Shown here one piece after another: positions 35,652 to 36,892 of a stretch of 64,000 nt of DNA. The first letter of the stretch is position 1, and each line of letters starts with the position of its first letter. This stretch comes from Magallana gigas (taxonomy: Eukaryota): contig NC_088859.1 in assembly GCF_963853765.1 (NCBI RefSeq), positions 35,774,001-35,838,000 of the forward strand. The letters run 5' to 3'. Below the pieces are notes generated by a model. The model ran no database searches and was not told the DNA's origin. It saw nothing but the letters and a program-made list of their open reading frames with translations. The position numbers and the translations under genes are program-made.

Positions 35652-36892
35652 GAAATTCGATTCAAAATAGTAGACGAATTTGTACTTTAAGTTACTTATT
35701 CTTTTTCTGATACATAGGTCGACTGACCGACTCCAGAATCTTTGACACGTCACGTGGTCGGTCTCCGTTCGATTTTGTGGTGGGACAGGGATCAGTCATA
35801 AATGGTAAGTCCGTATGATACGTGATATGAGTTTATCATCTCTACTCAAACTGCAATGCAAATTAAAATATAAAAATCGTTTGTTTCTTTCAGGTTGGGA
35901 TGTAATGGTCCGATATGTAAGTACAAGACTGGTGATTGAAATAGATTTCTTTTTTAAAACGCCATTTACGCTACCACATATCGCATGTTTTTCAGATGAG
36001 CAAAGGACAGAAGGCCCGGGTCATTATAACCTATGACGACGCATACGGAGACACCGGGATACCCCAGTCATATCCTTTCATAAACAAGCTTCGCGTCTTT
36101 TTCCAATGCATTTTGTTTTTCATTAAGATGTTGTGTAGAATATTTGTTTCTTGATTTATTTCTATCGTAAAGCAAAATTCCTTATCTGTTATCAAAAACC
36201 CACCCATTCCACCGTTTGCGACTCTGATATTTGATGTGGAAATAGTGGACGTTAAGCGGGGGGACGCTCAGGGACAAGGGAACTCTTTGATCCAAAGCAA
36301 CGCTGCTGCCACCCAAAATGTCCAGGCCAACATTCAAGCAACTCAGACAGGACAGAGTGCTATTGGCGGACAAATCGGGCGACAAGCAGGACAGACGGCG
36401 ATAAACTTCCCACAACAGACCTCGGGTACTGCGTTGATGGGACAGACGAACACAGCTGGAGGAATAGCAACCGCCGGTGGAGTTCAGGCTGGAATGTTTG
36501 GAACTCAAGCAATGAACCCCCTGTTAACCCAACAACAAAATCAGCAGTTTAATCAGGCCAGTTTGATACAACAGTTGAACGCAGCTGCTGCTGCAGCAGG
36601 CGCACAGCAACAACAGCCTCAGCAACAGCAACAATTCATGGCGCAACCTGGTTCGCAGACATTTAATGCTTTGAACACGTTACAAACGCAACAACAACTT
36701 CTTGCAGCACAAGCTCCACAGCAACAGTTCGCTGCACGAACGGTTATGCAACAACAACCTCAGTTTGCACAAACAATTGGTATTCAGCAACCAGCGTCCC
36801 AACAGATCGGGATGGGTGTTGGTCAAACCCGAGGAGTAGGCATGCCGATGGGGAATACAAATTTTGTGTCACAAGTCGGGCAGACAGGATAG
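33784..36892 (+). CDS. Signal-peptide FKBP with C-terminal Gln/Gly/Ala-rich low-complexity tail, ~337-338 aa (paralog 3)
   Basis: Exons 33784-33871, 34751-34798, 35718-35804, 35894-35916, 35996-36069, ~36196/36199-36892. MDPPVFLLLVLLFGLSEG-RVEIRTTKVGDDKTIPKDGDTVSVHYTGRLTDSRIFDTSRGRSPFDFVVGQGSVINGWDVMVRYMSKGQKARVIITYDDAYGDTGIPQS..PIPPFATLIFDVEIVDVKR, then ORF 36236..36892 (Q-rich). Exact last acceptor uncertain. Confidence 0.82.
35588..35649. repeat. (AC)n(AT)n microsatellite
   Basis: Direct reading. Confidence 0.95.
36070..36198 (+). other. U12-type intron with non-canonical 3' end (paralog 3)
   Basis: Donor ATATCCTTTC at 36070; branch-like TTCCTTATC at 36178-36186. In-frame ends are AA (36195 or 36198); the AC ends (36199, 36203) are out of frame. 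Confidence 0.75.

What the first reader, a model, noticed from the sequence alone, without database searches (positions are those of the whole stretch)
36070..36235. The Gln-tail paralog's U12 intron has no in-frame AC acceptor: AT-AA intron or a splice-controlled frame switch
Seen: the donor at 36070 is phase 2. Using AC at 36198-99 gives S-H-P-F-H-R-L-R-L-stop, and AC at 36202-03 also stops early; both lose the last FKBP strand and the whole Q-rich tail. In-frame joins need AA at 36194-95 (11 nt after the branch A, the same spacing as in the other three paralogs, giving GIPQSNPPIPPF) or AA at 36197-98. The branch is also degenerate (TTCCTTATC). Known: AT-AA minor introns exist but are very rare. 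Inference: either a genuine AT-AA intron, possibly with competing AC use gating tail production, or a one-base error in the CCC run at 36203-36205 (removing one C gives canonical AC and GIPQSIPPF).
Basis: partly seen in the sequence, partly recalled or inferred. Interest (0 to 1): 0.72.

Follow-up and report, generated by a model that had tools for sequence, protein, structure and literature searches.

The report
Genuine AT-AA minor intron, oyster FKBP
The odd intron is real. Oyster mRNAs remove window 36070-36195 as a minor-spliceosome (U12-type) intron that ends in AA instead of AC and keeps the reading frame, which is a rare but already known intron variant, not an assembly error or a frame switch.

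Summary

**The gene.** The window is oyster DNA (Crassostrea/Magallana gigas-angulata type). The gene at 33784-36892 encodes a 338-aa protein: a hydrophobic N-terminus, an FKBP domain and a Gln-rich tail.

**The junction.** Assembled transcripts join 36069 directly to 36196, giving GIPQS|NPPIPPF. The intron is therefore 36070-36195, 126 nt, AT...AA. All 21 retrieved proteins that contain the junction read QSNPPIPPF.

**Why it is U12-type.**
- The donor ATATCCTTT is a perfect match.
- The branch site TTCCTTATC has its only A 11 nt from the intron end.
- This spacing is identical in the three AT-AC paralogs and in all orthologs.

**Not an assembly error.** Fifteen independent genomic contigs and two from a 92% relative all carry the AA and the CCC run.

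**Origin.** Ostrea edulis and C. virginica-type orthologs have AC at the same position. AA therefore arose by a terminal C-to-A change with the junction unchanged.

**The AC sites.** No product using the out-of-frame AC sites, 15 and 19 nt from the branch A, was found. Raw-read depth was too low (25 reads) to exclude rare use.

**Novelty.** AT-AA is the commonest non-canonical minor-intron type, and RefSeq models of three oyster species already carry this junction. This is a new member of a known kind, of modest interest.

The parts
33784..33871 (+). Exon 1 coding part (ATG at 33784). It encodes a hydrophobic N-terminus, MDPPVFLFLVLLFGL.., read by eye as a probable signal peptide. Transcript contig L002 starts at 33772.
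   Evidence: blastn of L002 to the window and exact split search; protein sequences.
34751..34798 (+). Exon 2, flanked by GT-AG introns 33872-34750 and 34799-35717.
35718..35804 (+). Exon 3 (FKBP domain, GRLTDSRIFDTSRGRSPFDFVVGQGSVIN).
   Evidence: The GT-AG joint 35804|35894 is seen in 5 raw RNA reads.
35894..35916 (+). Exon 4, a 23-nt micro-exon (GWDVMVRY).
   Evidence: Joints on both sides are seen in raw RNA reads of runs X21 and X22.
35996..36069 (+). Exon 5 (MSKGQKARVIITYDDAYGDTGIPQ + TC of Ser). It ends in phase 2.
36070..36195 (+). Intron 5: U12-type AT-AA intron, 126 nt. The junction has a formal 1-nt ambiguity (36071-36196, TA..AA) because A36070 equals A36196.
   Evidence: Transcript L002 reads CCCCAGTC|AAACCCACCC. 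Raw RNA read depth is zero at 36077-36162.
36070..36078 (+). U12-type 5' splice site ATATCCTTT, a 9/9 match to the A-type consensus.
   Evidence: It is conserved in all orthologous genomic contigs that reach it.
36178..36186 (+). Branch-point sequence TTCCTTATC. The only A is at 36184, 11 nt from the last intron base. A common allele reads CTCCTTATC.
   Evidence: The U12 snRNA of this genome carries GAGTAAGGAAAAT.
36194..36195 (+). Terminal AA of the intron. The orthologous position is AC in Ostrea edulis and C. virginica-type DNA.
36198..36203 (+). Two out-of-frame AC dinucleotides (36198-99 and 36202-03), 15 and 19 nt from the branch A. No product using them was found.
36196..36892 (+). Exon 6 coding part: the NPP insertion, the last FKBP strand (IPPFATLIFDVEIVDV), a Gln/Ala-rich tail of about 210 aa, and stop TAG at 36890-36892. 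Transcript contig L002 aligns on to 36934.
   Evidence: Pfam FKBP_C covers residues 32-124 across the junction.

Best explanation
Intron 5 of this oyster FKBP gene (window 36070-36195) is a functional minor-spliceosome intron of the A-type with AT-AA termini.

**Shown.**
- mRNA joins 36069 to 36196 in frame.
- The product is a complete FKBP domain with a 3-residue NPP insertion in the loop before the last strand, followed by the Gln-rich tail.
- The AA and the CCC run are real in the genome and invariant in every sampled contig.
- Orthologs in O. edulis and C. virginica-type DNA have AC at exactly this position, with the same junction.

**Inferred.**
- The intron is recognised by U11/U12 through its perfect ATATCCTTT donor and its TTCCTTATC branch site.
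- The 3' splice site is picked by distance (11 nt after the branch A), not by dinucleotide identity. That would explain why a terminal C-to-A change in the Asian Crassostrea (Magallana) lineage left the junction unmoved, and why the AC sites 4 and 8 nt downstream are passed over.
For: **Transcripts.**
- Transcript contig L002 (SRR6150992) reads ...CCCCAGTC|AAACCCACCCATT, equal to window 36069|36196.
- A transcript from a 63%-identical relative, L014, has the same junction.
- All 21 retrieved proteins that include the N-terminal FKBP part read QSNPPIPPF. These include RefSeq models XP_052687839.1 (C. angulata), XP_022318028.1 (C. virginica) and XP_048762052.1 (O. edulis).
- Pfam FKBP_C matches profile positions 3-94 of 94 across the junction, E 4e-28.

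**Genomic DNA.**
- Fifteen genomic contigs from 15 different runs all carry ATCAAAAACCCACCCATT. Their polymorphisms elsewhere in the intron show they are independent haplotypes.
- The own genome has a single locus for this gene.

**Relatives.**
- O. edulis L009 has donor ATATCCTTTG, branch site TTTCCTTAAC and then CTTTGTCAC|AAATCC.
- C. virginica-type L010 reads TTCCTTATCTTTGATCAC|AAATCC.
- A 92% relative, L011/L012, reads ...TATTATCAA|AAATCC.

**Spacing.** The 8-nt TCCTTNNN element followed by 9 nt is identical in every ortholog and in the three AT-AC paralogs of the window.

**Minor spliceosome.** U12, U6atac and U11 snRNA genes are present above the Rfam cut-offs. The U12 branch-pairing element is intact.

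**Raw reads.** There is zero depth inside the intron. Depth of 0.47 in bin 36163-36205 of run X22 equals 2 reads times 10 nt, which fits an exon start at 36196.

**Literature.**
- AT-AA is the commonest non-canonical minor-intron type (PMC10639083).
- Human MSH3 is AT-AA while mouse is AT-AC (PMC1557818).
- The optimum branch-to-3'ss distance is 11-13 nt (PMC3584512).
Against: - Dependence on the minor spliceosome is inferred from motifs and was not tested.
- The branch site is degenerate. The second A of TTCCTTAAC is T, and a common allele also changes the first T to C.
- The junction has a formal 1-nt ambiguity (AT..AA versus TA..AA).
- The only raw-read test gave 25 reads, and the U12 joint was below the 3-read listing threshold. 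Junction evidence therefore rests on assembled contigs and gene models, which drop rare isoforms.
Confidence: 0.92

Rival explanations
1. Assembly error: one C too many at 36203-36205, so the true intron is an ordinary AT-AC intron giving GIPQSIPPF.
Against: - The mRNA contig itself contains AAACCCACCCATT.
- Fifteen independent genomic contigs carry the same CCC run.
- O. edulis and the 92% relative have TCCACCC, and C. virginica-type DNA has the same length as TCCACCT.
- Every protein reads SNPPIPPF, not SIPPF.
- That AC would lie 19 nt from the branch A, outside the 11-13 nt optimum (PMC3584512).
Confidence: 0.01
2. Splice-controlled frame switch: the AA site competes with the out-of-frame AC sites at 36198-99 and 36202-03. 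Regulated 3' splice-site choice then decides between the full FKBP-Gln-tail protein and a truncated, probably unstable, product.
For: - Two AC dinucleotides lie 15 and 19 nt from the branch A.
- Reviews state that U12-type 3' splice-site choice is error-prone and that non-canonical termini often splice less efficiently (PMC3584512).
- Raw-read depth here was too low to see minor isoforms.
Against: - A search with the N-terminal 107 aa for proteins of 59-187 aa found only one close hit, P0055. It uses the same AGTC|AAACC junction and is truncated by a 1-nt frameshift inside exon 5.
- All 21 junction-containing proteins are in frame.
- In the 92% relative the first AC is absent (AAAAATCC), yet the AA junction is kept, so that nearer AC is not conserved.
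- The AC sites lie outside the optimum distance.
Confidence: 0.05
3. Pseudogene, or transcripts that come from another copy: this locus is not productively spliced.
For: None beyond the lack of an in-frame AC.
Against: - The own genome has a single locus.
- Transcript contigs match the window exons at 97-100%, and all six exons join into an open 338-340 aa frame.
- The tail ORF and junction peptide are conserved across Crassostrea and Ostrea.
- Raw poly(A) RNA reads cover exons 3-6.
Confidence: 0.01
4. The AT-AA intron is removed by the major (U2-dependent) spliceosome, or the true boundaries are TA..AA (36071-36196).
For: U2-dependent AT-AC introns exist (PMC1557818). The junction is ambiguous by one base.
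Against: - The donor is a 9/9 match to the U12 A-type consensus, with nothing resembling a U2-type donor.
- A TCCTTA branch box sits at fixed spacing and there is no polypyrimidine tract.
- The same architecture is conserved in four paralogs and in all orthologs.
Confidence: 0.02

Closest known systems
A-type (AT-AN) U12-dependent introns with AT-AA termini, e.g. human RASGRP4 and MSH3 (Sheth et al. 2006, PMC1557818; Larue and Roy 2023, PMC10639083; de Wolf et al. 2021, PMC8280824)
   Same: - ATATCCTTT donor.
- TCCTTA-type branch box 11 nt from the 3' end, with no polypyrimidine tract.
- Last intron base A instead of C.
- An AT-AC/AT-AA switch between orthologs, as in mouse versus human MSH3.
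   Different: - A new host gene (a mollusc FKBP with a Gln-rich tail) and a new lineage.
- The branch box has also lost its second A.
- Two out-of-frame AC dinucleotides lie just downstream and are not used in any retrieved product.
The three neighbouring FKBP12-like paralogs of the window, with AT-AC U12-type introns at 22284-23610, 32368-32486 and 40977-41295
   Same: Same intron position and phase 2, same donor ATATCCTT, same branch-to-3'ss spacing.
   Different: They end in AC, lack the NPP insertion (the exon starts directly at IPPN) and have no Gln-rich tail. I did not check their splicing with transcripts.
FKBP-type peptidyl-prolyl isomerases (Pfam PF00254), FKBP12-like
   Same: A full-length FKBP_C match at residues 32-124, E 4e-28.
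   Different: A hydrophobic N-terminus, a 3-residue NPP insertion at the splice junction in the loop before the last strand, and a Gln/Ala-rich C-terminal tail of about 210 aa with no Pfam match.

Membership tests
U12-type (minor) intron, A-type AT-AN subclass | Extended 5' splice site /ATATCCTTT | tested here: met
   ATATCCTTT at 36070-36078, 9/9. It is conserved in the gigas-type, 92%-relative and O. edulis genomic contigs that reach the donor.
U12-type (minor) intron, A-type AT-AN subclass | Branch-point sequence TTCCTTAAC-like, close to the 3' splice site (optimum 11-13 nt, PMC3584512), with no polypyrimidine tract | tested here: met
   TTCCTTATC at 36178-36186, an 8/9 match. A36184 is 11 nt from 36195, and only TGTTATCAA lies between.
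U12-type (minor) intron, A-type AT-AN subclass | The intron is actually removed at these boundaries in mRNA | tested here: met
   L002 joins 36069 to 36196. Twenty-one proteins read QSNPPIPPF. The raw-read joint was below the listing threshold.
U12-type (minor) intron, A-type AT-AN subclass | The organism has minor-spliceosome snRNAs | tested here: met
   U12 at 126 bits, U6atac at 90 bits and U11 at 98 bits, all above the Rfam cut-offs. The U12 element GAGTAAGGAAAAT is present. U4atac was not searched.
U12-type (minor) intron, A-type AT-AN subclass | Orthologous introns are U12-type (type conserved across species) | tested here: met
   O. edulis is AT..AC with TTTCCTTAAC. The C. virginica-type contig ends in AC with TTCCTTATC, but its donor is not in the contig.
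U12-type (minor) intron, A-type AT-AN subclass | Splicing depends on U11/U12/U4atac/U6atac (functional test) | not testable with these tools
   Needs snRNA knock-down or an in vitro splicing assay.
FKBP-type PPIase (PF00254) | Full-length match to the FKBP_C profile above the gathering score | tested here: met
   97.9 bits against a cut-off of 21.1, profile positions 3-94 of 94.
FKBP-type PPIase (PF00254) | Peptidyl-prolyl isomerase activity | not testable with these tools
I compared active-site residues only by eye, from memory of FKBP12.

The most novel reading that the evidence does not exclude
The terminal AA weakens the intron enough that the minor spliceosome sometimes slips to the AC sites 4 or 8 nt downstream. 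Oysters of the Magallana lineage would then use this slippage, for example under changing minor-spliceosome activity, to switch between the full FKBP-Gln-tail protein and a frame-shifted transcript that loses the last FKBP strand and the tail.
Probability: 0.05. Interest if true: 0.55.

Novelty: new member of a known kind. Interest (0 to 1): 0.25.

Why it matters
**For annotation.** The gene is intact, and the non-canonical junction in the RefSeq models of three oyster species is right. Pipelines that insist on AC or AG would truncate this protein.

**For minor-splicing biology.** This is a clean natural experiment. Within oysters, the last intron base changed from C to A while the junction stayed on the same nucleotide, even though AC dinucleotides lie 4 and 8 nt downstream in the window. 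That agrees with the established rule that U12-type 3' splice sites are set by distance from the branch point.

**Limit.** It adds a dated, polarised example of an AT-AC to AT-AA switch but no new principle.

Tried and rejected
- **Raw reads.** I laid four raw-read RNA runs on 35690-36950. About 1% of each run is read, so only 25 reads landed, and X24 gave none. The two GT-AG joints were listed, but the U12 joint fell under the 3-read threshold. No junction counts at 36195/36199/36203 could be made.
- **Truncated AC-isoform proteins.** I searched with the N-terminal 107 aa. The only close hit, P0055 (116 aa), is a 1-nt frameshift inside exon 5 with the normal junction. This is weak evidence, because a truncated isoform could be hidden as a member of the full-length 90% cluster.
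- **ENA contigs of P0010 and P0011.** These C. virginica-type contigs were not on record. I used a Logan contig of the same cluster instead (L010).
- **Short tail-only ORF contigs, P0038 and P0039.** I checked them as possible alternatively spliced transcripts. All still carry the intron's branch box and 3' end, and those that reach that far also carry the donor, so they are genomic or unspliced.
- **Earlier findings of this scan.** Nothing near this place.
- **Oyster minor-intron literature.** Nothing relevant.
- **Extra-C origin of the NPP insertion.** Rejected, because the NPP codons are conserved from Ostrea to Crassostrea.

Full report
**Observation**

The window is AT-rich eukaryotic DNA with introns. 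At 36070 there is a perfect U12-type donor, ATATCCTTT, after an exon that ends ...GGG ATA CCC CAG TC, which is phase 2. The downstream frame runs ATT CCA CCG TTT GCG... from 36206. It encodes IPPFATLIFDVEIVDV, the last FKBP strand, and then about 210 Gln/Ala-rich residues up to TAG at 36890-36892.

I translated every possible join.
- AC at 36198-99 gives S-H-P-F-H-R-L-R-L-stop.
- AC at 36202-03 gives S-H-S-T-V-C-D-S-D-I-stop.
- Among acceptors at plausible distance, in-frame joins need exon starts at 36196 or 36199 (both after AA), or at 36202 or 36205 (both after CC).

The branch box TTCCTTATC lies at 36178-86.

**Context**

A tblastn search with the exon translations finds four tandem FKBP12-like genes on the + strand. 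Each has ATATCCTT at the same codon and phase. The other three introns are 22284-23610, 32368-32486 and 40977-41295, and all end in AC in frame. In all four genes the 8-nt TCCTTNNN element is followed by exactly 9 nt before the exon. Counted this way, the 3' end of the intron in question falls at 36195. ATATCCTT is over-represented in the window, 11 matches against 4.0 expected with no shuffle of 100 reaching 11.

**What the mRNA does**

A protein search with the tail exon found 13 relatives. Five are 339-349 aa with an FKBP domain, and all read GDTGI(P/A)QSNPPIPPFATL.

The Logan transcript contig that encodes one of them, L002 from SRR6150992, reads ...GATACCCCAGTC|AAACCCACCCATTCCACCG. It aligns to the window as six exons. 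An exact split search gives these boundaries:
- Exon 1: 33772-33871, ATG at 33784.
- Exon 2: 34751-34798.
- Exon 3: 35718-35804.
- Exon 4: 35894-35916.
- Exon 5: 35996-36069.
- Exon 6: from 36196, with L002 aligning on to 36934.

Introns 1-4 are GT-AG. Intron 5 is 36070-36195, AT..AA, 126 nt. The only alternative placement is one base to the right (TA..AA), because A36070 equals A36196. The window's own coding sequence adds up to 1014 nt, or 338 aa, in frame.

All 21 retrieved proteins that include the N-terminal part read QSNPPIPPF. They include RefSeq models of Crassostrea angulata (XP_052687839.1), C. virginica (XP_022318028.1) and Ostrea edulis (XP_048762052.1). This also identifies the window as an oyster of the C. 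gigas/angulata type. Pfam FKBP_C covers residues 32-124, the whole profile, across the junction.

**Assembly error and pseudogene are excluded**

- The mRNA itself contains AAACCCACCCATT.
- Fifteen genomic Logan contigs from 15 different runs all read ATCAAAAACCCACCCATT. They differ elsewhere in the intron (AATTCC...GTTATC versus AACTCC...GTTTTC), so they are independent haplotypes.
- The genome has only one locus for this gene.

**Raw reads**

- It confirms the GT-AG joints at 35804|35894 and 35916|35996.
- It shows zero depth within 36077-36162.
- It gives a depth of 0.47 in bin 36163-36205 of X22. That equals two reads covering ten bases, as expected for an exon starting at 36196.
- The U12 joint had fewer than three reads and was not listed, so no isoform ratio can be given.

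**Evolution**

| Source | Branch box and 3' end | Terminal pair |
|---|---|---|
| O. edulis (L009, GCA_947568905.1; donor ATATCCTTTG, intron about 630 nt) | TTTCCTTAAC CTTTGTCAC\|AAATCCACCCATT | AC |
| C. virginica-type contig (L010) | TTCCTTATC TTTGATCAC\|AAATCCACCTATT | AC |
| 92%-identical relative (L011, L012) | TTCCTTATC TATTATCAA\|AAATCCACCCATT | AA |
| Window | TTCCTTATC TGTTATCAA\|AAACCCACCCATT | AA |

Sixteen C. virginica-type ORFs read ...ITNPPIPPF, which fits the ATC ACA AAT seen in L010, so AC appears invariant in that sample.

The three paralogs and both outgroups have AC, so AC is ancestral. The second A of the branch box became T before C. virginica and the Asian Crassostrea lineage split. 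The terminal C became A afterwards in the Asian (Magallana) lineage. The junction did not move by a single base. In the 92% relative the first downstream AC does not exist (AAAAATCC), so that AC is not a conserved element.

**Mechanism**

The genome encodes U12, U6atac and U11 snRNAs above the Rfam cut-offs. Its U12 carries GAGTAAGGAAAAT, which from my own knowledge is the branch-pairing element.

Published work states the following.
- U12-type introns are defined by their 5' splice site and branch sequence, not by their terminal dinucleotides (PMC3584512).
- The optimum branch-to-3'ss distance is 11-13 nt (PMC3584512).
- Non-canonical termini support splicing, often less efficiently (PMC3584512).
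- U12-type 3' splice-site choice is error-prone (PMC3584512).
- The 3' terminal base varies, giving the AT-AN class (PMC8280824).

The simplest reading, which I infer, is that U11/U12 bind the donor and the branch box, A36184 is the branch nucleotide, and the 3' splice site is taken 11 nt downstream whatever the last base. The AC sites at 15 and 19 nt lie outside the optimum.

**Comparison with what is known**

- AT-AA is the most common non-canonical minor-intron boundary in both animals and plants. Non-canonical boundaries make up about 3.8% of conserved animal minor introns (PMC10639083).
- Sheth et al. list 3 human and 4 mouse AT-AA introns, and an AT-AA (human) versus AT-AC (mouse) switch in MSH3 (PMC1557818).

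The present case is therefore a new member of a known kind. Gene models already carry the junction, although I found no description of it.

**The frame-switch idea**

A search for short proteins sharing the N-terminal 107 aa found only P0055. It is truncated by a 1-nt frameshift inside exon 5 and still uses AGTC|AAACC. Contig-level data drop rare isoforms and the raw reads were too few. Low-level or regulated AC use therefore remains untested, and I give it about 5%.

**Verdict**

The assembly-error and pseudogene options are refuted. Interest is modest.

Noticed in passing
window 21722-23653, 31261-32532, 40425-41338: Three further FKBP12-like paralogs lie in tandem on the + strand. Each has a phase-2 AT-AC U12-type intron at the same codon: 22284-23610 (1327 nt), 32368-32486 (119 nt) and 40977-41295 (319 nt). 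This is a small family of minor-intron genes produced by tandem duplication. Their splicing was not checked with transcripts.
   Followed up: partly
window 35894-35916: A 23-nt micro-exon (GWDVMVRY) sits inside the FKBP domain. Both flanking GT-AG joints were confirmed by raw RNA reads.
   Followed up: yes
window 33784-33871 and 36250-36889: The protein has a hydrophobic N-terminus (MDPPVFLFLVLLFGLSEG) that looks like a signal peptide. It also has a Gln/Ala-rich tail of about 210 aa with no Pfam match, conserved from Ostrea to Crassostrea at 60-68% identity. It may be a secreted or ER-resident FKBP with a low-complexity tail. Its function is unknown.
   Followed up: no
window 36178-36193 (compare L003-L008, L015-L023): Two common intron haplotypes differ inside and just after the branch box: AATTCCTTATCTGTTATC versus AACTCCTTATCTGTTTTC, plus recombinants. 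The C allele removes the first T of TTCCTTATC. Whether it affects splicing efficiency is unknown.
   Followed up: partly
P0055 (Logan contig, 116 aa): One transcript contig has a 1-nt frameshift inside exon 5 (...ARVIIPMTTHTETPGYPSQTHPFHRLRL) with the normal exon 5-6 junction. It is either a sequencing or assembly error or a rare null allele.
   Followed up: partly
window 2449, 5270, 16852, 43892 (+) and 1559, 14289, 29969 (-): Seven further exact ATATCCTT matches lie outside the four FKBP donors. The window total is 11 against 4 expected. Some may be further minor-intron donors.
   Followed up: no
window 35586-35650: A compound (AC)n(AT)n microsatellite of about 65 nt lies in intron 2 of the gene.
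   Followed up: no
window 36310 and 36374: RNA reads of run X22 mostly show A at 36310 (4 of 5) and G at 36374 (5 of 6) where the window has C and A. Both are probably ordinary oyster polymorphisms in the tail exon.
   Followed up: no
window 29275-29420: A run of 146 N (assembly gap or masked stretch), left untouched.
   Followed up: no
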